Positions 4,716 through 21,944 of a stretch of DNA of 64,000 nucleotides are shown here, one piece after another; the first letter of the stretch is position 1; every line of letters starts with the position of its first letter. The position numbers and the translations under genes were made by a program. The notes beneath the pieces were generated by a model. That model was given only the letters and a program-made list of their open reading frames with translations, did no database searches and was not told where the DNA came from. This stretch comes from Macrostomum lignano (taxonomy: Eukaryota), in contig NIVC01000215.1 of assembly GCA_002269645.1 (NCBI GenBank), positions 558,001-622,000 on the forward strand, in the 5' to 3' direction.

Positions 4716-5318
4716 TTTTTTATCATCTCCACCAAGCAGCCCCATAGCGTGTCGCATTCCGCCGCCTCCGCTGCCACCGCTGCCGCCAGCATCAGCGAAC
4801 AGGGCCAACTCGTAGATGTGACCATCGGCCGTGCCAACCAGAATCGGTCCAGTCCCGCCGGCACCTTTGCCGCTATAAGCGATTCCATCGTCACCGGAAG
4901 GGCACCAAGCCACGCTATCCACTAGTTGATCCTTCAGTTTAGCGATAGGTTTAATTGCTATGCCAGCATCCTGATGATGCCTGTTGTTAGGCCAGCAGGC
5001 ATATAGAACGCAGCCGGACTGCATGCTGGCAATGATGTGGGTACCAGTGGGATCGAAGAACAGACTGTGTAGCCGATCGTCTGAGCCGCCACTCTTGGCC
5101 AACTCTAAGCGCTGCAAAGCTTTGCTATCAGATCGGCGAGTGTCAATGCAGTGCAAATAGTTGCTAGGGAAAGCCATTAGTAACCGACCGGAAGCGGCTA
5201 GCAGGTGAGTGATGGGCAGTGGCGGTTGGAATGCTTCGATTCGTTGAATTCGAAGCAATTGACCCGCTGCTGCTTCCAGCTGTTGCTGGTGCTGTTGCTC
5301 CTGCTGCTGGTAGTCCAT
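4716..5318 (-). CDS. VPS18: Vps18 exon 1
   Basis: ATG at 5318; LFFDPTGTHII, KLKDQLVDSVAW and GPILVGTADGHIYE resemble the Vps18 beta-propeller; donor GTTTGT at 4715 in phase 0 joins exon 2 in frame. Confidence 0.85.
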
Positions 5319-5365
5319 GGCTGGCTGGGAATGGCAATTTTTGTAGATTCATTCTTATCTTCAAA

Positions 5366-7731: not shown

Positions 7732-8246
7732 TTAAAGCACCCTAGCAACCAGTTTAGCAACCGAATCGTGCAACATCATAGCCTTGCGCACTCCAGTCTC
7801 AATTATCTCCGTCATGGACTCGAACTGTAGCGAGCCTTCGCCGCAAGTCTGGCAGGCCACCAGCCGGCCATTCGAATCAACTCCCACAGTTACTCTGGCC
7901 ATCGAGCAGGACTCTTCAAGTTGATTAGCGTCCACAATCTGTTGCGAGCCGATCCGGTGCACAGTGGCAAACAGAGGCAGAGCCTGGGCAGACAACAGGC
8001 TGGCTGGCAAAGCGCGCATCAACGCGGCTGAGGCAGCGATACTGGCCGCGTCTAGTAAATTGCCGTCGTAGCCTAGCAACAGGATGTCAACAAACACTGG
8101 AGTCGGGGTGCGCAGGCAGCGGTAGAGGCTGGATAGGTGAGCTTGGGCCTCATCAGCGAGCTGCTGCTGCTCTGGGCCGGAGCCGAGGCAGCTGCAGTCC
8201 ACCCACACTGATACTGGATGGCTGACCGCCTGCTGCTGCTGAACTG
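7732..8246 (-). CDS. EXOSC7: Exosome component RRP42 exon 2 (terminal)
   Basis: VWVDCS..VFVDILLLGYDGNLLDAASIAASAAL..LPLFATVHRIG..VDANQLEESCSMARVTVGV..GEGSL match the RNase PH-like RRP42; TTTCCAG acceptor in phase 1; stop at 7732-7734. Confidence 0.88.
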
Positions 8247-8269
8247 CTGGAAATAAGGAAGGGGGTTGG

Positions 8270-9045
8270 GGCGGAAATCAGGTATGAGAGGGAGCGGAAA
8301 GCAGGTATGAGAGGGAGCGGAAAGCAGGTATGAGAGGGAGCGGAAATCAGGTATGAGAGGGAGCGGAAAGCAGGTATGAGATGGAGCGGAAATCAGGTAT
8401 GAGATGGAGCGGAAATCAGGTATGAGATGGAGCGGAAATCAGGTATGAGAGGGAGCGGAAATTATATGAAAGGGGGAGATCAGGTATAAGAAGGGGTGGA
8501 AATCAGGTATTGATTATAATGAGGGGCGGAAATCAGGTATGGATAATAATGAGGGGGCGGAAATTAGGTATGGATAATAATGAGGGGCCGGAAATCAGGT
8601 ATGGATAATAATGAGTTGGCGAAAATCAGGTATGGATAATAATGAGGGGGCGGAAATCAGGTATGGATAATAATAGGGGGGGGGGGCGGAAATCAGGTAT
8701 GGATAATAATGAGGGGGCGGAAATTAGGTATGGATAATAATAATGAGGGGCCGGAAATCAGGTATGGATAATAATGAGTTGGCGAAAATCAGGTATGGAT
8801 AATAATGAGGGGCCGGAAATCAGGTATGGATAATAATGAGGGGGCGGAAATCAGTTATGGATAATAATGAGTTGGCCAAAATCAGGTATGGATAATAATG
8901 AGGGGGCGGAAATCAGGTATGGATAATAATAGGGGGGCGGAAATCAGGTATGGATTATGATGAGGGGCGGAAATCAGGTATGGATTATGATGAGGGGCGG
9001 AAATCAGGTATGGTTATGATGAGGGGCGGAAATCAGATATGTGGT
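8270..9045. repeat. 23-30-bp minisatellite (GGCGGAAATCAGGTATGGATAATAATGAGG-type), Exosc7 intron 1
   Basis: Direct periodicity; unit changes along the array. Confidence 0.93.
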
Positions 9046-9110
9046 TTATGGAAATGGAGAAATGAGGTACAAACGATCAGAGACAGTCATAAAACAGATA
9101 GCAGTCATAC

Positions 9111-9354
9111 CAACGGAGCCAGTAGATCCCTGTTGCTGGGCAGTCGCACCGGGATTATCTTCCTCTCGCACGGACACGAGCACGTCTGTCTCCCCTAGGC
9201 TGACCTGGGCTGAGGCGGTGGCGTAGCACAGCAGGTCCAGCCTGAGCGCGGCCTGCCGATAGGCCAGGCATTGCCGGCCGTCGATTCGAACAGCGTCTTG
9301 AACGCTATCGAATATGTACTGCCGCTCCGGCTCGCTTAGCAACTGGGCGAGTAG
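9111..9354 (-). CDS. EXOSC7: RRP42 exon 1 (5'-partial: no ATG in this exon)
   Basis: LSEPERQYIFDSVQDAVRIDGR..ASAQVSLGETDVLVSV resembles the RRP42 N-terminus; donor GTATGA at 9110 (phase 1); acceptor CCCACAG at 9355. Confidence 0.85.
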
Positions 9355-9384
9355 CTGTGGGATTTAACAGAAATTACTGTGATT

Positions 9385-12047
9385 TAGTGAAGATTGGTAG
9401 ATTCGATGAAGATTGGTAGATTCAGTGAAGATTGGTAGATTCAGTGAAGATTGGCAGATTCAGTGAAGATCGGCAAATTCGGTGAAGATCGGCAGATTCG
9501 GTGAAGATCGGCAGATTCAGTGAAGATTGGCAGATTCGGTGAAGATTGGTAGATTTGGTGAAGATTGGCAGATTCAGTGAAGATTAGCAGATTCAGTGAA
9601 GATTGGCAGATTCGGTGAAGATTGGCAGATTTAGTAAAGATTGGCAGATTCGGTGAAGATCGGCAGATTCGGTGAAGATCGGCAGATTCAGTGAAGATTG
9701 GTAGATTCGTGAAGATTGGCAGATTCGGTGAAGATTGGCAGATTCAGTGAAGATTGGCAGATTCGGTGAAGATCGGCAGATTCAGTGAAGATTGGCAGAT
9801 TCGGTGAAGATTGGTAGATTCGGTGAAGATTGGCAGATTCAGTGAAGATTAGCAGATTCAGTGAAGATTGGCAGATTTAGTAAAGATTGGCAGATTCGGT
9901 GAAGATCGGCAAATTCGGTGAAGATCGGCAGATTCGGTGAAAATCGGCAGATTCGGTGAAGATTGGTAGATTCGGTGAAGATTGGCAGATTCAGTGAAGA
10001 TTGGTAGATTCGGTGAAGATTGGCAGATTCAGTGAAGATTGGCAGATTCAGTGAAGATTGGTAGATTCGGTGAAGATTGGCAGATTCGATGAAGATTGGT
10101 AGATTCGGTGAAGATTGGTAGATTCGGTGAAGATTGGTAGATTCGGTGAAGATTGGCAGATTCAGTGAAGATTGGCAGATTCAGTGAAGATTGGCAGATT
10201 TAGTAAAGATTGGCAGATTCGGTGAAGATCGGCAGATTCGGTGAAGATCGGCAGATTCAGTGAAGATTAGCAGATTCAGTGAAGATTGGCAGATTTAGTA
10301 AAGATTGGCAGATTCGGTGAAGATCGGCAAATTCGGTGAAGATCGGCAGATTCGGTGAAAATCGGCAGATTCGGTGAAGATTGGTAGATTCGGTGAAGAT
10401 TGGCAGATTCAGTGAAGATTGGTAGATTCGGTGAAGATTGGCAGATTCAGTGAAGATTGGCAGATTCAGTGAAGATTGGTAGATTCGGTGAAGATTGGCA
10501 GATTCGATGAAGATTGGTAGATTCGGTGAAGATTGGTAGATTCGGTGAAGATTGGTAGATTCGGTGAAGATTGGCAGATTCAGTGAAGATTGGCAGATTC
10601 AGTGAAGATTGGCAGATTTAGTAAAGATTGGCAGATTCAGTGAAGATTGGCAGATTCGGTGAAGATTGGCAGATTCGGTGAAGATTGGCAGATTCAGTGA
10701 AGATTGGCACATTTGATGAAGATTGGCAGATTCGGTGAAGATTGGCAGATTTAGTGAAGATTGGTAGATTCGATGAAAATTGGCAGATTCGATGAAGATT
10801 GGTAGATTCGATGAAAATTGGTAGATTTGGTGAAGATTGGCAGATTTGATAAAGATTGGCAGATTCAGTGAAGATTGGCAGATTCAGTGAAGATTGGCAG
10901 ATTCAGTGAAGATTGGCACATTTGATGAAGATTGGCAGATTCGGTGAAGATTGGCAGATTTAGTGAAGATTGGTAGATTCGATGAAAATTGGCAGATTCG
11001 ATGAAGATTGGTAGATTCGATGAAAATTGGTAGATTTGGTGAAGATTGGCAGATTTGATGAAGATTGGCAGATTCAGTGAAGATTGGCAGATTCAGTGAA
11101 GATTGGCAGATTCGATGAAGATTGGCAGATTCGGTGAAGATTGGTAGATTTGGTGAAGATTGGCAGATTCGGTGAAGATTGGCAGATTCAGTGAAGATTG
11201 GCAGATTCAGTGAAGATTGGCAGATTTAGTAAAGATTGGCAGATTCGGTGAAGATCGGCAGATTCGGTGAAGATCGGCAGATTCAGTGAAGATTGGTAGA
11301 TTCGTGAAGATTGGCAGCTTCGGTGAAGATTGGCAGATTCAGTGAAGATTGGTAAATTCAGTGAAGATTGGTAAATTCAGTGAGATTGGTAGATTCGGCG
11401 AAGATTGGCAGATTCGATGAAGATTGGCAGATTCGATGAAGATTGGCAGATTCAGTGAAGATTGGCAGATTCGGTGAAGATTGGCAGATTCAGTGAAGAT
11501 TGGCACATTTGATGAAGATTGGCAGATTCGGTGAAGATTGGCAGATTTAGTGAAGATTGGTAGATTCGATGAAAATTGGCAGATTCGATGAAGATTGGTA
11601 GATTCGATGAAAATTGGTAGATTTGGTGAAGATTGGCAGATTTGATGAAGATTGGCAGATTCAGTGAAGATTGGCAGATTTAGTGAAGATTGGTAGATTC
11701 GATGAAAATTGGCAGATTCGATGAAGATTGGTAGATTCGATGAAAATTGGTAGATTTGGTGAAGATTGGCAGATTTGATGAAGATTGGCAGATTCAGTGA
11801 AGATTGGCAGATTCAGTGAAGATTGGCAGATTCGATGAAGATTGGCAGATTCGGTGAAGATTGGTAGATTTGGTGAAGATTGGCAGATTCGGTGAAGATT
11901 GGCAGATTCAGTGAAGATTGGCAGATTCAGTGAAGATTGGCAGATTCAGTGAAGATTGGCAGATTCGATGAAGATTGGTAGATTCGATGAAGATTGGCAG
12001 ATTCGGTGAAGATTGGCAGATTCGGTGAAGATTGGTAGATTCGGTGA
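9385..12047. repeat. 19-bp minisatellite (GATTGGCAGATTCRGTGAA)n, ~140 copies, with higher-order duplications
   Basis: Direct periodicity. Confidence 0.97.
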
Positions 12048-12508
12048 GGCTAACCAAATCTACGGCCAAGATAATTTCTTTCTACAAAAAATAAGGCTTA
12101 AATATTAACAATTAAAAAAATAACCGCTAGTTTTATTTATTGAAGTTTCAAAAAAAACTGAAATTGACATTAAGAACGCTTAATTACAGTCAATTTCAAC
12201 ATTTTTATAAGCAAATAATGCACTAAAATGCAAGTAAAGAAATTAGTAAGTTTCGAACTCAAATACAATTAAAGACAGATAAGACTTAGACGTACTTGAT
12301 TAAAATGTTTGTTATGTTTCTAGGATAAATAGTTAAAGTTAATAAAAAACAATTACAATGAAGTATAAGATTGGACATAAATCGACCAGATAGTAGATAC
12401 CATAGATACGAGAATGACTATGCAACTAAAATAGTTAAAAAGTAGAGCGTCTACTCTTTTTCTTAATAGTTTGTTTGCGCAGTGTTATTTAAATTAATGT
12501 GGCAGCTA

Positions 12509-13100
12509 TACTGTCCGTCAAAAGCCCCGGAACCCTTGCTACGATGTCTTCTAGCGGACATAATTTCAGTCCGTTTCAATTGTAACTTGATTCAAATGAA
12601 AGCTGCGGATCTCAGCTCCATGATGTGGTCAAGAAAAAGTTCATTCGAAGGAGCGCGTGTGAACAGGCCAGTGCTATGTACATAAAGGTTAGAGAGAAAA
12701 AGTGAGGAAAAGACAAACAAGCAATTGTCTATGGTTGCTGAGTCTATGGAGCAAACACACATGGGAAGGAATCGGTTTGCGCGCAGTGTTCAGCCTGGCT
12801 AACATTAGTCTATGGCCAAAACCTGTGTTGAAATCAACAGGCTCTTATGGATTCTTGTGCAGTCAGCTTTCATGGGAGAGTCAATTGCTTGTTTGTCTTT
12901 TCCTCACTTTCTTTCTCTAACCTTTATGTACATAACACTGGCCTGTTCACACGCGCTCCTTCGAATAAACTTTTTCTTGACCACATCATGGAGCTGAGAT
13001 TCGCAGCTTTCATTTAAATCAAGTTACAATTGAAACGGACTGAAATTATGTCCGCTAGAAGACATCGTAGCAAGGGTTCCGGAACTTTTGACGGACAGTA
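12509..13100. mobile_element. Non-autonomous TIR element (MITE), Tc1/mariner-like; ~218-bp TIRs, ~150-bp spacer
   Basis: TATACTGTCCGTCAAAAG...CTTTTGACGGACAGTATA; arms ~12511-12728 and ~12881-13098 are reverse complements; TA flanks. Confidence 0.85.
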
Positions 13101-13401
13101 TAAAATTAACTTTCCTTCCTAGGGTTTGCAGCCTCAGGAGCATATGGGGTTAAGACTAATATAGCTTATTTCAGCCCATTTGGGCTTACGCGCATTGAAT
13201 TTAATCCAAGATACGTTTGCCAATGCAATGGAGCTTTTGTCTATGGTAGCAAGGCTGGCACAGCGGCATTTAATTTGGTCCAACAAGCATCAATTTGGTC
13301 CAAACGCTCGTGAGCCATTCGGGAAATTCTTGCCTTCTCGCAACCGTCTGCGGGTTGTTGCGTACCGCTGGAATTTCAGCGTCTCTACAACGAAAAGTCA
13401 G

Positions 13402-15331: not shown

Positions 15332-15976
15332 TCACTCAGCTTTAGTATCTTTATAAACATAAACCGACTGTTCAGTCAGGCAGGCGAGGAACCGGCCATG
15401 CCTGACAGGCGCAATGTCCAGCACAGGACTGGGCAGTCTAGCCATGGACTGCAGCTTCTCTCCAGTCGCCGCGTCCCACAGGTTTAACCTACAGGTAGCT
15501 TCATCTCCAGCAGCCACGGTCAGAGCTCCGCCGGATCTGCTAGCCTGTTGAAATAGTCGACTCCTAGCTAGGAGCTTCATCGATTGGCCAGCTCGAATTC
15601 GACTCAGAGGTCTCAGTGCGGATTCCATGGTTGCTGTCGAATCGCTACTATCAGCGCTGGTGCGAATGAAATCCAAACTGTAGACGGAGTGCTCAACACC
15701 CGGACGTTGCTGCTGCGGCTGCTGTTGCTGGTGGTTGGCAGTCGGTCGGTGAGTCAACAGGACGTGTCGACTGTCGGGATCTGCGGCCAGCCAAGCCAGC
15801 TGCTGACCACTGCCGGGGCCGGGCATCGGGAGCAGCGCGGCCTGGTGACTGTCGGCTTCGGTTGCTGCGGCTGCGGCGACTGTCGATGGCCGACGGTAGA
15901 GGCTCAGGCGGTCGAACTGGCCGGCTAGCAAAGCTGATGGTGCAGCGCCGCCTGCGGCTGGGGCACCGGCTGGCAG
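15332..15976 (-). CDS. RFWD3: RFWD3 exon 3 (WD40 C-terminus)
   Basis: LLAGQFD..RHVLLTHRP..AGQSMKLLARSRLF..VAAGDEAT..LNLWDAATGEKLQ..PVLDIAPV..FLACLTEQSVYVYK; CCGCCAG acceptor in phase 0; 645 nt including stop. Confidence 0.85.
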   Translation of the reverse strand: MPAGAPAAGGAAPSALLAGQFDRLSLYRRPSTVAAAAATEADSHQAALLPMPGPGSGQQLAWLAADPDSRHVLLTHRPTANHQQQQPQQQRPGVEHSVYSLDFIRTSADSSDSTATMESALRPLSRIRAGQSMKLLARSRLFQQASRSGGALTVAAGDEATCRLNLWDAATGEKLQSMARLPSPVLDIAPVRHGRFLACLTEQSVYVYKDTKAE

Positions 15977-16009
15977 CTGGCGGGATGGGGGCGGTTTTGG
16001 TAGTTTTTA

Positions 16010-16870
16010 ATGGGGAGGATTTAGTAGATGTTTACTATGAGGATGCGGATTTAGTAGATTTTGATGAAGAGCGGATTTAGTAGATTTTGATGAAGGGCGG
16101 ATTTGGTAGATTTTGATGAAGAGCGGATTTAGTAGATTTTGATGAAGGGCGGATTTAGTAGATTTTGATGAAGGGCGGATTTGGTAGATTTTGATGAAGG
16201 GCGGATTTAGAAGATTTTGATGAGGGGCGGATTTGGTAGATTTTGATGAAGAGCGGATTTGGTAGATTTTGATGAAGAGCGGATTTGGTAGATTTTGATG
16301 AAGAGCGGATTTGGTAGATATTGATGAAGAGCGGATTTGGTAGATTTTGATGAGGGGCGGATTTAGTAGATTTTGATGAGGGGCGGATTTAGTAGATTTT
16401 AATGAGGATGCGGATTTAGAAGATTTTGATGAGGGGCGGATTTAGTAGATTTTGATGAAGGGCGGATTTAGTAGATTTTGATGAAGAGCGGATTTGGTAG
16501 ATTTTGATGAAGGGCGGATTTGGTAGATTTTGATGAAGGGCGGATTTGGTAGATTTTGATGAAGGGCGGATTTGGTAGATTTTGATGAAGAGCGGATTTG
16601 GTAGATTTTGATGAGGGGCGGATTTAGTAGATTTTGATGAGGGGCGGATTTAGTAGATTTTGATGAGGATGCGGATTTAGAAGATTTTGATGAGGGGCGG
16701 ATTTAGTAGATTTTGATGAAGGGCGGATTTAGTAGATTTTGATGAAGAGCGGATTTGGTAGATTTTGATGAAGGGCGGATTTGGTAGATTTTTATGAAGG
16801 GCGGATTTGGTAGATTTTGATGAAGGGCGGATTTGGTAGATTTAGATAAAGGGCGGATTTGGTAAATTTT
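16010..16870. repeat. 26-bp minisatellite (GGGCGGATTTRGTAGATTTTGATGAA)n, RFWD3 intron 2
   Basis: Direct periodicity. Confidence 0.95.
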
Positions 16871-16959
16871 GACAAATAAGGGGATTAGGATTTTGCAGGG
16901 GGGAGCGGCAGGGGCGGATTACATCGCTAGCGCAAAACTTAAAAAGCCGCCGCACTCAC

Positions 16960-17403
16960 AGAAGCCATGGACACCACCGAGGTGACACTGGGCGGCTCCT
17001 CAGCGCACGGCAGCACGCTCACGTGACTGCCAATGTGACGCATATCGAAGCACATCACCCTGCCGTTGGCCAAGCCTGCATAGAACTGATTGGGATCATA
17101 CGGACTCCAGCAGCAGGACCACACAGCTGTGGGACAATCGAAATAGCAAACAGTCTGCTCGGAGTGAAAGCCGGTTAACCTGATTTGCTTGTCCATGCTG
17201 GCGGTGAGCAGCAGGGTGCCCTCGGGATTAAAGCAGGCATCCCGCAGTTTATTAGTGTGCAAATGAATGTAGCTGGAATTGCGAAAGTCTATTAAATCCA
17301 ACTTGCGAAGGCCGTAGCCGCGGAATAGAGGATTTCGGCTAGGCTGGGAGATGCACAGCACGTTGAGCTGCTGGTTGAGTGCGAGTACTCGGCACTCGCC
17401 TAC
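16960..17403 (-). CDS. RFWD3: RFWD3 exon 2 (WD40)
   Basis: VGECRVLA..GYGLRKL..YIHLHTNKLRDACF..LLLTASMDKQIRL..VWSCCW..FYAGLANGRVMCFDMR; CCCAG acceptor, GTGAGT donor, 444 nt. Confidence 0.9.
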
Positions 17404-17454
17404 CTGGGAAGCGCAAGGAGGCGGTTGATTAGTTAGGGAGATATCCTATTGACT

Positions 17455-18185
17455 TGGAGGATCATGACCCATTCAAAACAGACATCTATAGGGATCATGA
17501 CCCATTCTAAACAGACATCTATAGGGATCATGACCCATTCTAAACAGACATCTATGGGGATCATGACCAATTCTAAACAGACATCTATGGGGATCATGAC
17601 CCATTCTAAACAGACATCTATAGGGATCATGACACATTCTAAACAGACATCTATGGGGATCATGACCCATTCTAAACAGAAATCTATAGGGATCATGACC
17701 CATTCTAAACAGACATCTATGAGGATCATGACCCATTCTAAACATACATCTATGGGGATCATGACCCATTCTAAACATACATCTATAGGGATCATGACCC
17801 ATTCAAAACAGACATCTTTAGGGACCATGACACATTCTAAACAGACACATCTGTAGGGTCATGACCCATTCTAAACATACACATCTGTAGGGTCATAACC
17901 CATTCTAAACAGGCACATCTGTGGGGATCATGACCCATTCTTTATCTATGGGGATATTGACCCATTCTTAACAGATACATCTAGAAGGATCATGACCCAT
18001 TCTTAATCTATGGGGATTACGACCCATTCTTTAGCAGACACATCTATGGGGATCATGGCCCATTCTTTCTCTTTGGGGATCATGACCCATTCTTAATCTA
18101 TGGGGATTACGACCCATTCTTTAGCAGACACATCCATGGGGATCATGACCCATTCTTTATCTTTGGGGATCATGACCCATTCTTA
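17455..18185. repeat. 33-bp minisatellite (GGGATCATGACCCATTCTAAACAGACATCTATA)n, RFWD3 intron 1
   Basis: Direct periodicity (11-aa repeats in ORF track). Confidence 0.94.
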
Positions 18186-18288
18186 ACAGAAATATCAAGA
18201 CTTAATTCAGAAACTGCATAGAATCAGAAGCAACTCTAGACATAAGAATCGTACAAACTGGTAACCAGAGAACCTCACATCCACTCAC

Positions 18289-19458
18289 CTGAGAAATCAT
18301 GACATTGTCTTCCAAATGATAAGAGCAAGTCTCTCCGCCAGCATCGGTCAGATCAATAGTCAGCTTAGATGAATGACTTCGATAGAACTCCAATTGGCGA
18401 GATAGTCGCCTGTTTTCATCTCTGAGCATGTCTAGTCTCAACCGCATGTCCCCAGCCTCCTGCTCGGCGGTTAGTTTAGCTCGTTTAATCTTGTCAATCT
18501 CGAGTTTTAAAGCTTCATTCTCGCTATTATCTACAGCTCTGAGATTGGTAACATACAAGGGCAGCACTTCGTGACGTCGGCAATTTCTATTGCACTGCGG
18601 GCACTGTTGCCGGGTTTCTAACCAACGCTCGACGCAAGACTTGCCAAACAGATGGCCGCAACGCAACGCGCAGACTCGATGCTCGCCAGATGATGTCCAG
18701 GGCTCAAAACAGATTGTGCAACCTTCGTCTGCAGGTTGAGGAGGACTAGAAGAAGCCGCCGCAGCACCACCTCCAGACGGTCCTTCACCGTCGCTTAATC
18801 GACGCTTCTTAACGATAACCCTGGAGTTGGATGCCCCAGATTCCGGATGCGAATCAAGCCGTTGCTGTTGTCGTCTACGCGAAGAAGTTCTAGCATCTGG
18901 AGGAGCCGTAACTCTTCGACGACTATTACTAGTTGAACGTCTCAGATCGTCAATGACAAGGAAATCGTCCAGTTCATTATCATCATTATCAAGATCTTCA
19001 ATCATTATAGGCTGTGGCAGATGGATTTGACCAGGCACGTCATCTGTCAAATCAATAATCTCGCCAGCGAGAGCGTCGTTCTGTGGTTCATTTTCATAAT
19101 TATCTGCATCATCATCGTTATTATTGTTATTAGTAGTGGTATTCGCATTCTCATCGTTAATATCGATAACAACGTTAACTTCCTGTTGTTCTGTTTCGTT
19201 ATCATCTTGTTGAGCTTGTTCAGTGGCTAAACCAACAGTGGGATTCTGATTACCATCCTCCAGTACTACAGATGATGTTTCTGACGTGTCCGAGCGCGAT
19301 TCAAACAAAGAAGCTGAGGAGGAATTGCCATCAGTATGGTTAATATTATTGTTGTTGCTGTTCCTGTTGCTTTCAGTATTATTACTACTACTATTCTCTG
19401 ACGTGGATGGCCCACCGTATATAAGATTCGGAGCCGAAATACTGACACCCTCTGCCAT
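18289..19458 (-). CDS. RFWD3: RFWD3 E3 ubiquitin ligase exon 1 (disordered N-terminus, RING finger, coiled coil)
   Basis: CTICFEPWTSSGEHRVCALRCGHLFGKSCVERWL..CPQC..LYVTNLRAVD is the RFWD3 RING signature; ATG at 19458 (the track starts at an upstream GTG); CAG/GTGAGT donor in phase 0. Confidence 0.9.
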
Positions 19459-21455: not shown

Positions 21456-21908
21456 TTACCAGTCCAGCTGCACAGGATATTTCCCTGTCAGACAGGCATC
21501 GCAATGTCCAATAGGGTTGCTGGTGCACCCAGCCGAGACAGCCTTGTGCAGTCCTTCAACGCTGAGATAGGCTAAAGAATCCGCGTTCAAAGCTCTTCGA
21601 AGCTGCTCCAACGTGAGCTTATTAGCGATGAGCTCCTCTTTAGTAGGGATATTAATCCCCATATAGCAGGGATGACGTAGAGGCGGACTGGCAATACGAA
21701 TATGCACCTCGGATGCACCTCGGGATCTTAGCAGGCTAACAATGGGACCCATTGTGTTGCCCCGAACAATGGAGTCGTCAATGAGCACGATGCGCTTATC
21801 GCGTACGTTCTCTTCGATGACGCCGAATTTTTTTGCTACGCCAACTTGACGCAGCAGATTGCTGGGCTGGATGAAGGTACGACCGATGTAGCGGTTCTTG
21901 CAGAATAC
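21456..21908 (-). CDS. PPAT: Amidophosphoribosyltransferase exon 5 (terminal)
   Basis: [27 protein letters not shown] (PRPP-binding)..[29 protein letters not shown] (Fe-S ligands); CCCTCAG acceptor. Confidence 0.95.
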
Positions 21909-21944
21909 CTGAGGGCAGATGGGGTCGGGTTAGAGTGGGCTCTG

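What the first reader, a model, noticed from the sequence alone, without database searches (positions are those of the whole stretch)
9343..9366. Exosc7 has no start codon of its own: spliced-leader AUG candidate
The conserved RRP42 N-terminus (LSEPERQY) has no in-frame ATG. An in-frame TAA lies at 9364-9366, and the first Met comes late in exon 2. Two acceptors (CCCACAG at 9355 and GCCCAG at 9343) both end exactly in phase 0. A possible mini-exon beyond the 19-bp array (12081-12055, TTTTTTGTAG/KEIILAVDL/GTTAG) is also phase 0 and lacks ATG. Flatworm spliced leaders are known to end in AUG and can supply the initiator Met, so translation of an essential exosome subunit may depend on trans-splicing here.
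Basis: partly seen in the sequence, partly recalled or inferred. Interest (0 to 1): 0.7.

Follow-up and report, generated by a model that had tools for sequence, protein, structure and literature searches.

The report
Exosome gene borrows spliced-leader start codon
The Macrostomum lignano (flatworm) gene for exosome subunit Rrp42/Exosc7 has no start codon of its own and most likely gets its AUG from the trans-spliced leader, a mechanism already known in flatworms, so this is a clean example and not a new phenomenon.

Summary
On the minus strand, a two-exon Rrp42/Exosc7 gene (9354..9111 and 8246..7732) opens directly behind an AG acceptor. An in-frame TAA lies three codons upstream, and the first in-frame Met is residue 158.

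The window is Macrostomum lignano assembly Mlig_3_7, contig NIVC01000215.1. My spliced translation starting at base 9354 is identical to GenBank PAA87849.1, "BOX15_Mlig026854g2, partial". Two gene models from an older assembly start at the same base without a Met, two more fit that start if a 1-nt indel is assumed, and one starts 9 nt further in.

Published work gives the M. lignano spliced leader (SL) as 35 nt ending in ATG. The Mlig_3_7 annotation trimmed the SL from reads and cut transcription units at SL sites. In a paralogous locus the upstream RFWD3-like gene and Exosc7 are g3 and g4 of one transcription unit.

Joining the SL to 9354 gives M-LLAQLLSEPERQY…, an N-terminus of the same length and pattern as 41 Met-initiated homologues.

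I saw no read that spans the SL junction, so trans-splicing and initiation at the SL AUG are inferred, with confidence about 0.85. Use of the flatworm SL AUG as initiator was described in 2006 for Schistosoma. This is a new member of a known kind, of low to moderate interest.

The parts
9364..9366 (-). In-frame TAA in the outron, three codons upstream of the acceptor. It closes the reading frame upstream and is conserved in paralogues L001 and L002.
9355..9375 (-). Acceptor 1: TTTCTGTTAAATCCCACAG, AG at 9356-9355. Inferred SL trans-splice site.
   Evidence: The GenBank CDS PAA87849.1 and UniProt model P0013 start at the next base, 9354, and UniProt models P0014 and P0004 start at the equivalent base of their own copies. 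13 of 20 pyrimidines upstream.
9111..9354 (-). Exosc7/Rrp42 exon 1 (244 nt, ends in phase 1, donor GTTG|GTATGA). It encodes LLAQLLSEPERQY… and contains no ATG in frame.
   Evidence: Exon 1 plus exon 2 translates exactly to P0012.
9343..9344 (-). AG of alternative acceptor 2 (GCCCAG|TTG). It is also phase 0 and would give M-LLSEPERQY. No gene model supports it.
   Evidence: All seven frame-true models contain sequence upstream of it.
8247..9110 (-). Intron 1, almost wholly made of 23-bp and 31-bp tandem repeats.
7732..8246 (-). Exosc7 exon 2 (acceptor TTATTTCCAG|CAG) through the stop TAA at 7734-7732. It carries the first genomic in-frame Met (residue 158) and the RNase_PH_C domain.
9387..12047 (-). 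19-bp satellite, 140 copies, filling the outron / upstream spacer. Paralogues L001 and L002 have only about 18 copies. It holds 3 ATGs and no GT[AG]AG on the gene strand.
12048..12508 (-). AT-rich unique segment upstream of the array, about 95% identical in the three copies. Neither is in any gene model. It may hold a promoter or simply be spacer.
12507..13102 (.). Foldback (MITE-like) insertion with 224-nt arms, 96% complementary. Absent from the paralogous loci.
13190..13195 (-). Best sequence-only rival: ATGCGC|GTAAGC, a phase-0 two-codon exon end with a consensus donor. It lies in an arm of a repeat element and is not in any gene model.
15332..19458 (-). Upstream same-strand RFWD3-like gene (RING + WD40). 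In paralogue L002 it is Mlig032125g3 and Exosc7 is Mlig032125g4, two genes of one transcription unit.
5316..5330 (-). 5' end of the downstream Vps18 gene: TTCCCAG|CCAGCCATG. An SL AUG joined here would also be in frame (M-P-A-M-D-Y). The L001 model is 5'-partial and starts exactly at this acceptor.

Best explanation
The Exosc7/Rrp42 pre-mRNA of Macrostomum lignano is transcribed with a long, repeat-filled 5' outron. It is probably part of a multi-gene transcription unit, RFWD3-like > Exosc7 > Vps18. The 35-nt spliced leader (…TTATTGCATG) is trans-spliced onto the acceptor CCCACAG| so that base 9354 follows the leader's terminal AUG. That AUG is then the first AUG on the mRNA, is in frame, and serves as initiator, giving M-LLAQLLSEPERQY… (253 aa).

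Shown here: the gene structure, the lack of any genomic start codon, the organism, and the exact match of the published 5'-partial model to the acceptor.

Taken from the literature: the SL sequence, its terminal ATG, and the use of the flatworm SL AUG as initiator.

Inferred: that this particular mRNA carries the SL at 9354, and that ribosomes start at its AUG.
For: 1. **Frame:** the reading frame is closed by TAA at 9366-9364. There is no ATG until residue 158, and the RNase_PH domain spans residues 32-160.
2. **Annotation:** my translation from 9354 equals GenBank PAA87849.1, 'Mlig026854g2, partial', exactly. The annotated CDS is 9354..7732.
3. **Other models:** UniProt model P0013 starts at the same base, and P0014 and P0004 start at the equivalent base of their own copies. 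P0002 and P0005 fit that start if a 1-nt homopolymer indel is assumed (inferred from their N-terminal residues; their DNA was not read). P0001 starts 9 nt downstream, still upstream of acceptor 2. None of these seven has Met.
4. **Pipeline:** the annotation trimmed SL sequence from reads and transcripts and cut transcription units at SL-read peaks (PMC5730564). A cis exon would have aligned to the genome, whereas the SL is encoded elsewhere. The SL is not in the window.
5. **Gene numbering:** 'g2' marks this as the second gene of a transcription unit. In paralogue L002 the RFWD3-like gene is g3 and Exosc7 is g4 of unit Mlig032125.
6. **SL sequence:** the M. lignano SL ends in ATG. All reported flatworm SLs do, and the AUG has been reported to initiate translation in S. 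mansoni (Cheng et al. 2006, as cited in PMC9851317 and PMC12582326).
7. **N-terminus:** 41 of the 42 closest non-Macrostomum homologues start with Met, typically 1-8 residues before the S-x-x-E…DGR motif. Query residue 5 aligns with the TLSEAEK start of human EXOSC7. Only the Met is missing.
8. **Selection:** 6 of the 7 exon-1 differences from paralogue L001 are at third codon positions, so the frame is under selection.
Against: - I could not inspect any read, cDNA or peptide showing SL joined to 9354. A scan of metagenome contigs for the junction found nothing, as expected. The candidate proteins with an added Met are not in the protein collection.
- Acceptor 1 fits the published trans-splice motif [T/C]TNCAG only partly (CCACAG).
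- One GenBank model (L001 copy, P0001) starts 9 nt inside the exon, not at the acceptor.
- The distance to the upstream gene is 6 kb. Even after subtracting repeats it is above the 1-kb operon threshold used by Ustyantsev & Berezikov.
- The SL AUG has a weak context (U at -3).
Confidence: 0.85

Rival explanations
1. A cis-spliced upstream exon supplies the ATG. The best candidate is ATGCGC|GTAAGC at 13195-13190, which would give M-R-LLAQ…. Another is the reader's ATG|GTATCT at 12403-12401.
For: Both are phase 0 and open. 13195-13190 has a consensus GTAAG donor, and an equivalent ATGTGT|GTAAGC exists in L001 and L002.
Against: - No such exon appears in any of the eight RNA-seq- or transcript-based models from two assemblies and three or more copies.
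- The conservation is no greater than in the surrounding 90-95% identical spacer.
- The 13195 candidate sits inside a 147-nt inverted-repeat arm of a mobile-looking insert.
- GTATCT is a poor donor.
- 38 phase-0 ATG..GT combinations occur in the 6 kb, so finding some is expected by chance.
Confidence: 0.06
2. Trans-splicing uses acceptor 2 (GCCCAG|TTG, first base 9342), instead of or alongside acceptor 1, giving M-LLSEPERQY….
For: It is also phase 0 and open. The resulting N-terminus length matches several homologues, for example MVLSEGERSF. The LLAQ/LPAQ tail differs between copies.
Against: All seven frame-true gene models include sequence upstream of 9342. Three begin exactly at acceptor 1 or its equivalent, and two more fit it if a 1-nt indel is assumed. 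The −6/−5 positions (GC) fit the [T/C]T motif worse than acceptor 1 does.
Confidence: 0.07
3. Non-AUG initiation within exon 1, for example at the in-frame TTG at codon 5 or CTG at codon 30. Alternatively, the locus is a decaying pseudogene or misassembly that has lost its ATG.
For: Near-cognate in-frame codons exist: TTG at codon 5, ATA at 14, ATC at 24, CTG at 30. One paralogue (L002) does carry a frameshift.
Against: - On an SL-capped mRNA the in-frame SL AUG precedes every near-cognate codon.
- The ATG is absent in all copies and in both assemblies, so a single-copy loss or assembly error does not explain it.
- Substitutions between copies are almost all at third codon positions.
- Both Pfam domains are intact.
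Confidence: 0.02

Closest known systems
[quoted passage not shown]
   Same: The SL ends in AUG, the acceptor places that AUG in frame, and the recipient ORF has no start codon of its own. In S. mansoni, 28% of trans-spliced transcripts are in frame and more than 40 cDNAs need the SL AUG (as summarised in PMC9851317).
   Different: A different species (the free-living, early-branching Macrostomum lignano) and a different gene. Here the evidence is genomic plus annotation-level, not cDNA or translation assays. I found no published per-gene statement for M. lignano Exosc7.
SL trans-splicing and operon-like transcription units of M. lignano (Wudarski et al. 2017, PMC5730564; Ustyantsev & Berezikov 2021, PMC8629364)
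   Same: The neighbouring genes lie on the same strand, the spacers are bloated with repeats, the gene is conserved (a class reported as enriched among SL targets), and it is numbered g2/g4 within a transcription unit.
   Different: The repeat-adjusted distance from RFWD3 to Exosc7 (roughly 1.7 kb plus the 3'UTR) exceeds their 1-kb operon cut-off. The AT-rich segment 12048-12508 could hold an independent promoter.
Eukaryotic exosome subunit EXOSC7 / Rrp42 (human 6D6Q chain E, 2NN6 chain E)
   Same: RNase_PH plus RNase_PH_C architecture. Best solved-structure match is human EXOSC7 at E = 7e-28. The N-terminal L-S-E-x-E-x-x-Y-I…DGR motif is colinear from residue 5.
   Different: It is shorter (253 vs 291 aa) and very divergent in the middle. 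Apart from M. lignano copies, no relative scores better than E = 1.8e-19 in the exhaustive search.

Membership tests
SL-AUG-initiated flatworm mRNA (slORF) | The organism has an SL RNA whose leader exon ends in AUG followed by a GU donor | not testable with these tools
   The SL gene is not in the window (Rfam 0 hits). Literature gives CGGTCTCTTACTGCGAAGACTCAATTTATTGCATG followed by GTAAG for M. lignano (PMC8629364; PMC5173321; PMC10468722).
SL-AUG-initiated flatworm mRNA (slORF) | The mRNA is SL trans-spliced at a defined 3' acceptor | tested here: inconclusive
   Indirect only. The GenBank 5'-partial CDS and three UniProt models begin exactly at the base after CCCACAG (or its equivalent in their copy), and two more fit it if a 1-nt indel is assumed. 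The gene is 'g2' of a transcription unit, and units were cut at SL-read peaks. No junction read was seen.
SL-AUG-initiated flatworm mRNA (slORF) | The SL AUG is in frame with the conserved ORF, with no intervening stop | tested here: met
   ATG + 9354… reads MLLAQLLSEPERQY and stays open through the exon. The full CDS is confirmed.
SL-AUG-initiated flatworm mRNA (slORF) | No genomic in-frame AUG could yield a complete protein | tested here: met
   TAA lies 3 codons upstream of the acceptor. The first Met is residue 158, at the end of the RNase_PH domain (residues 32-160). The same holds in L001 and L002.
SL-AUG-initiated flatworm mRNA (slORF) | Translation actually initiates at the SL AUG | not testable with these tools
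   This needs Ribo-seq, N-terminal proteomics or a reporter assay.
EXOSC7 / Rrp42 | RNase_PH domain 1 plus RNase_PH_C domain 2, with best matches to Rrp42 rather than other PH-ring subunits | tested here: met
   Pfam PF01138 at 1.5e-10 and PF03725 at 3e-10. Human EXOSC7 scores 7e-28, against RRP43 and RRP45 at 1e-5 to 1e-8. UniProt names the copies 'Ribosomal RNA-processing protein 42'.
M. lignano operon (Ustyantsev & Berezikov 2021 criteria) | Adjacent same-strand genes, the downstream one SL trans-spliced, repeat-adjusted intergenic distance under 1 kb | tested here: inconclusive
   Same strand, and the same transcription-unit prefix in L002. RFWD3 stop to Exosc7 acceptor is 5,977 nt, about 1.7 kb after subtracting the arrays and the foldback. 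Exosc7 stop to Vps18 acceptor is about 2.4 kb, about 0.64 kb after subtracting two arrays. UTR ends are unknown.

The most novel reading that the evidence does not exclude
Dependence on the SL AUG is obligatory and conserved in every homeologous copy of an essential exosome subunit. Under this reading, Exosc7 protein output would be hard-wired to trans-splicing efficiency. SL trans-splicing is reported to mark 85% of neoblast genes in this worm. Exosc7 would then be one of a sizeable, so far uncounted class of M. lignano genes deposited as '5'-partial' only because their start codon is encoded at the SL RNA locus. Choice between acceptors 9354 and 9342 could add two N-terminal isoforms.
Probability: 0.3. 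Interest if true: 0.4.

Novelty: new member of a known kind. Interest (0 to 1): 0.25.

Why it matters
It explains why GenBank and UniProt list this essential, conserved protein as 'partial' or Met-less in every copy. The start codon is not missing from the assembly. It is most likely encoded in trans by the SL RNA.

In practice, the annotation should add the SL Met, giving a 253-aa product. Transgene or knock-in designs for this gene in M. lignano need to keep the acceptor in frame.

More broadly, it is a clean test case for measuring how many Macrostomum genes depend on the SL AUG. That has been quantified for Schistosoma but, as far as I could find, not for this model flatworm. It does not reveal a new mechanism.

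Tried and rejected
- **First protein word search:** exon 1 alone found nothing. The full spliced protein was needed.
- **Rfam scan of the window:** no SL RNA or any other family.
- **SL sequence in the window:** absent with up to 3 mismatches, so no local SL gene. The ATG|GTATCT at 12403 is therefore not an SL gene.
- **Exact look-ups of Met-prefixed products:** the window and L001 alleles, at both acceptors, are not in the 15-billion-protein collection. This is uninformative, because the public M. lignano models were built after SL trimming.
- **Supplements of three M. lignano papers:** searched for Mlig020040, Mlig032125, EXOSC7 and RRP42; nothing is held.
- **Metagenome-contig scan for the SL-exon junction:** 0 hits.
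- **Cheng et al. 2006:** not held in the library, so it is cited through PMC9851317 and PMC12582326.
rejected as an exon. It has no ATG, is in no gene model, and is no more conserved than its surroundings.
- **My first exon-1 end (9109):** wrong by 2 nt, corrected to 9111.

Full report
**What is in the sequence**

The gene lies on the minus strand. Reading 9366→9340 gives TAA ATC CCA CAG|CTA CTC GCC CAG|TTG. The main features are:

- An in-frame TAA at 9366-9364.
- Acceptor 1, with AG at 9356-9355 and 9354 as the first exon base.
- Acceptor 2, with AG at 9344-9343 and 9342 as the first exon base.
- The conserved Rrp42 N-terminus, LSEPERQYIFDSVQDAVRIDGR.

Exon 1 runs 9354..9111 and ends at the donor GTTG|GTATGA. 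Intron 1 (9110..8247) is almost entirely 23-bp and 31-bp tandem repeats. Exon 2 runs 8246..7732, behind the acceptor TTATTTCCAG|, and ends in TAA.

The 252-residue translation has RNase_PH (residues 32-160) and RNase_PH_C (174-235) domains. Its best solved-structure match is human EXOSC7 at E = 7e-28. The first in-frame Met is residue 158. The one coordinate correction, exon 1 ending at 9111 rather than 9109, was to my own first estimate.

**Where the window comes from**

The spliced protein hits Macrostomum lignano proteins at 96-98% identity. An exact-sequence look-up shows that my translation starting at base 9354 is identical to GenBank PAA87849.1, "hypothetical protein BOX15_Mlig026854g2, partial".

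The contig that encodes it is NIVC01000215.1 of assembly GCA_002269645.1 (Mlig_3_7). It is base-for-base identical to the window's minus strand over 19,354 nt. The annotated CDS maps to 9354..7732. So the published, RNA-seq-guided model is 5'-incomplete and begins at the first base after CCCACAG.

**Other copies and other annotations**

M. lignano is partly polyploid, and two further loci carry the gene. They are L001 (NIVC01003717.1) and L002 (NIVC01000421.1).

- Both keep TAA ATC CCA CAG|CTA CCC GCC CAG TTG. The stop, both acceptors and the absence of ATG are all conserved.
- Window versus L001 exon 1 differs at 7 of 246 positions. Six are third codon positions, and the seventh changes codon 2 from Leu to Pro. 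The frame is under purifying selection and the short N-terminal tail is less constrained.
- UniProt model P0013 (LLAQLL…) starts at 9354, and P0014 and P0004 (LPAQLL…), from the older ML2 assembly, start at the equivalent base of their own copies.
- P0002 (TRQLL…) and P0005 (TAQLL…) fit the same start if a 1-nt homopolymer indel is assumed. I inferred this from their N-terminal residues and did not read their DNA.
- P0001 (L001 copy) starts 9 nt into the exon.
- None of these seven has a Met, and all seven contain sequence upstream of acceptor 2.
- The L002 GenBank model (P0003) starts at an out-of-frame ATG, because that copy has a 1-nt deletion in exon 1.

**Why a model that starts at an acceptor points to trans-splicing**

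Wudarski et al. 2017 built this annotation by trimming the spliced leader from transcripts and reads. They then mapped the remainder and used the SL-read peaks to cut 'transcriptional units' into genes with the TBONE pipeline. ORFs were called with TransDecoder (PMC5730564).

A cis-spliced 5' exon would have aligned to the genome and produced a complete ORF. A leader encoded at another locus is removed, which leaves a 5'-partial ORF that begins at the acceptor.

The suffix g2 marks the second gene of a transcription unit. In L002 the upstream RFWD3-like gene is Mlig032125g3 and Exosc7 is Mlig032125g4. In the window the same-strand order is:

- an amidophosphoribosyltransferase-like ORF near 21.9-21.5 kb;
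- RFWD3-like (19458..15332);
- Exosc7 (9354..7732);
- Vps18 (from about 5324).

**The leader**

Three papers give the M. lignano SL as …CGGTCTCTTACTGCGAAGACTCAATTTATTGCATG, followed in the SL RNA gene by GTAAG (PMC8629364; PMC5173321). Wiberg et al. [quoted passage not shown]

All reported flatworm SLs end in AUG. Cheng et al. 2006 reported its use as initiator Met in Schistosoma mansoni: 28% of trans-spliced transcripts are in frame and more than 40 cDNAs need it (as summarised in PMC9851317, and PMC12582326). The SL is not encoded in this window.

**Is only the Met missing?**

An exhaustive HMMER search found 502 relatives. Of the 42 best non-Macrostomum ones, 41 begin with Met, typically 1-8 residues before the S-x-x-E…Y/F-I…DGR motif. 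Query residue 5 aligns with the TLSEAEK start of human EXOSC7.

SL-AUG plus 9354 gives MLLAQLLSEPERQY, a normal full-length N-terminus. No extra coding exon is needed or expected.

**Rival explanations**

- **Cis exon.** The 5,977 nt between the RFWD3 stop and the acceptor contain 38 phase-0 ATG…GT combinations on the gene strand, but only two GT[AG]AG donors.
  - The best candidate, ATGCGC|GTAAGC at 13195-13190, also exists as ATGTGT|GTAAGC in L001 and L002.
  - It sits in a 147-nt inverted-repeat arm of a mobile-looking insert. It is no better conserved than its 90-95% identical surroundings, and it is in no gene model.
  - The 12081-12055 mini-exon has no ATG.
  - Neither of those two is in any model.
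- **Acceptor 2.** It would also work (M-LLSEPERQY), but the models contradict its being the main site.
- **Non-AUG initiation.** Near-cognate codons exist (TTG at codon 5 and others). On an SL-bearing mRNA they would lie behind an in-frame AUG.
- **Pseudogene or assembly error.** This is excluded by agreement across copies and assemblies and by the substitution pattern.

**What is not shown**

I could not see a read, cDNA or peptide spanning the SL junction. Supplements, protein look-ups and a contig scan gave nothing. Trans-splicing at 9354 is a strong inference from how the annotation was built. Initiation at the SL AUG is inferred from necessity and from the Schistosoma precedent.

**Operon question**

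Whether RFWD3 and Exosc7 form a true operon is uncertain. After subtracting the 19-bp array, two other arrays and the foldback, the spacer is still about 1.7 kb, above the published 1-kb repeat-adjusted cut-off. The AT-rich segment 12048-12508 could be a promoter.

**Verdict**

Acceptor 1 (9354) is the likely junction.

The mechanism is a textbook feature of flatworm SL trans-splicing, and the locus is already deposited as a 'partial' CDS. This is therefore a new, tidy member of a known kind. Its main value is for annotation and as a test case, not as a discovery.

Noticed in passing
window 12507-13102: Foldback / MITE-like element with 224-nt arms (96% complementary) and a 148-nt loop. It is inserted upstream of Exosc7 and is absent from both paralogous loci, so it is a recent insertion.
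   Followed up: partly
window 9387-12047 vs L001 9628-9965: The 19-bp satellite (GTGAAGATTGGCAGATTCG) has 140 copies here but only about 18 in the paralogous loci. Nearly every intron and spacer in the first 20 kb carries its own private tandem array (periods 4-86 bp).
   Followed up: partly
L001 7506-9112 (window keeps one arm, about 13250-13100): 147-nt inverted arms flank a 1.3-kb insert with a 281-aa ORF (weak Pfam DUF2120 / DnaB_2 hits). The insert is present in L001 and absent from the window. It is possibly a mobile element.
   Followed up: partly
L002 about 10080 (exon 1 of the Exosc7 copy on NIVC01000421.1): A 1-nt deletion (GGGGAGAC to GGGAGAC) shifts the frame. GenBank PAA83381.1 (Mlig032125g4) therefore starts at an out-of-frame ATG. 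This is either a decaying homeologue or an assembly error.
   Followed up: no
window 5316-5330 (minus strand): Vps18 begins behind TTCCCAG|CCAGCCATG. An SL AUG joined there is in frame with the gene's own ATG two codons later (M-P-A-M-D-Y). The L001 GenBank model is 5'-partial and starts exactly at that acceptor. The neighbouring gene may therefore receive a 3-residue SL-dependent N-terminal extension.
   Followed up: partly
window 9376-9378 (minus strand): A further AG (AATCACAG|TAA) lies 22 nt upstream of acceptor 1. Trans-splicing there would put the SL AUG directly before TAA, giving a one-codon ORF, so any use of that site would be unproductive.
   Followed up: no
window 21459-21929 (minus strand): An amidophosphoribosyltransferase (PPAT)-like exon lies on the same strand upstream of the RFWD3-like gene. 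Four unrelated housekeeping genes thus lie head-to-tail on one strand, as expected for an SL-resolved gene cluster.
   Followed up: no
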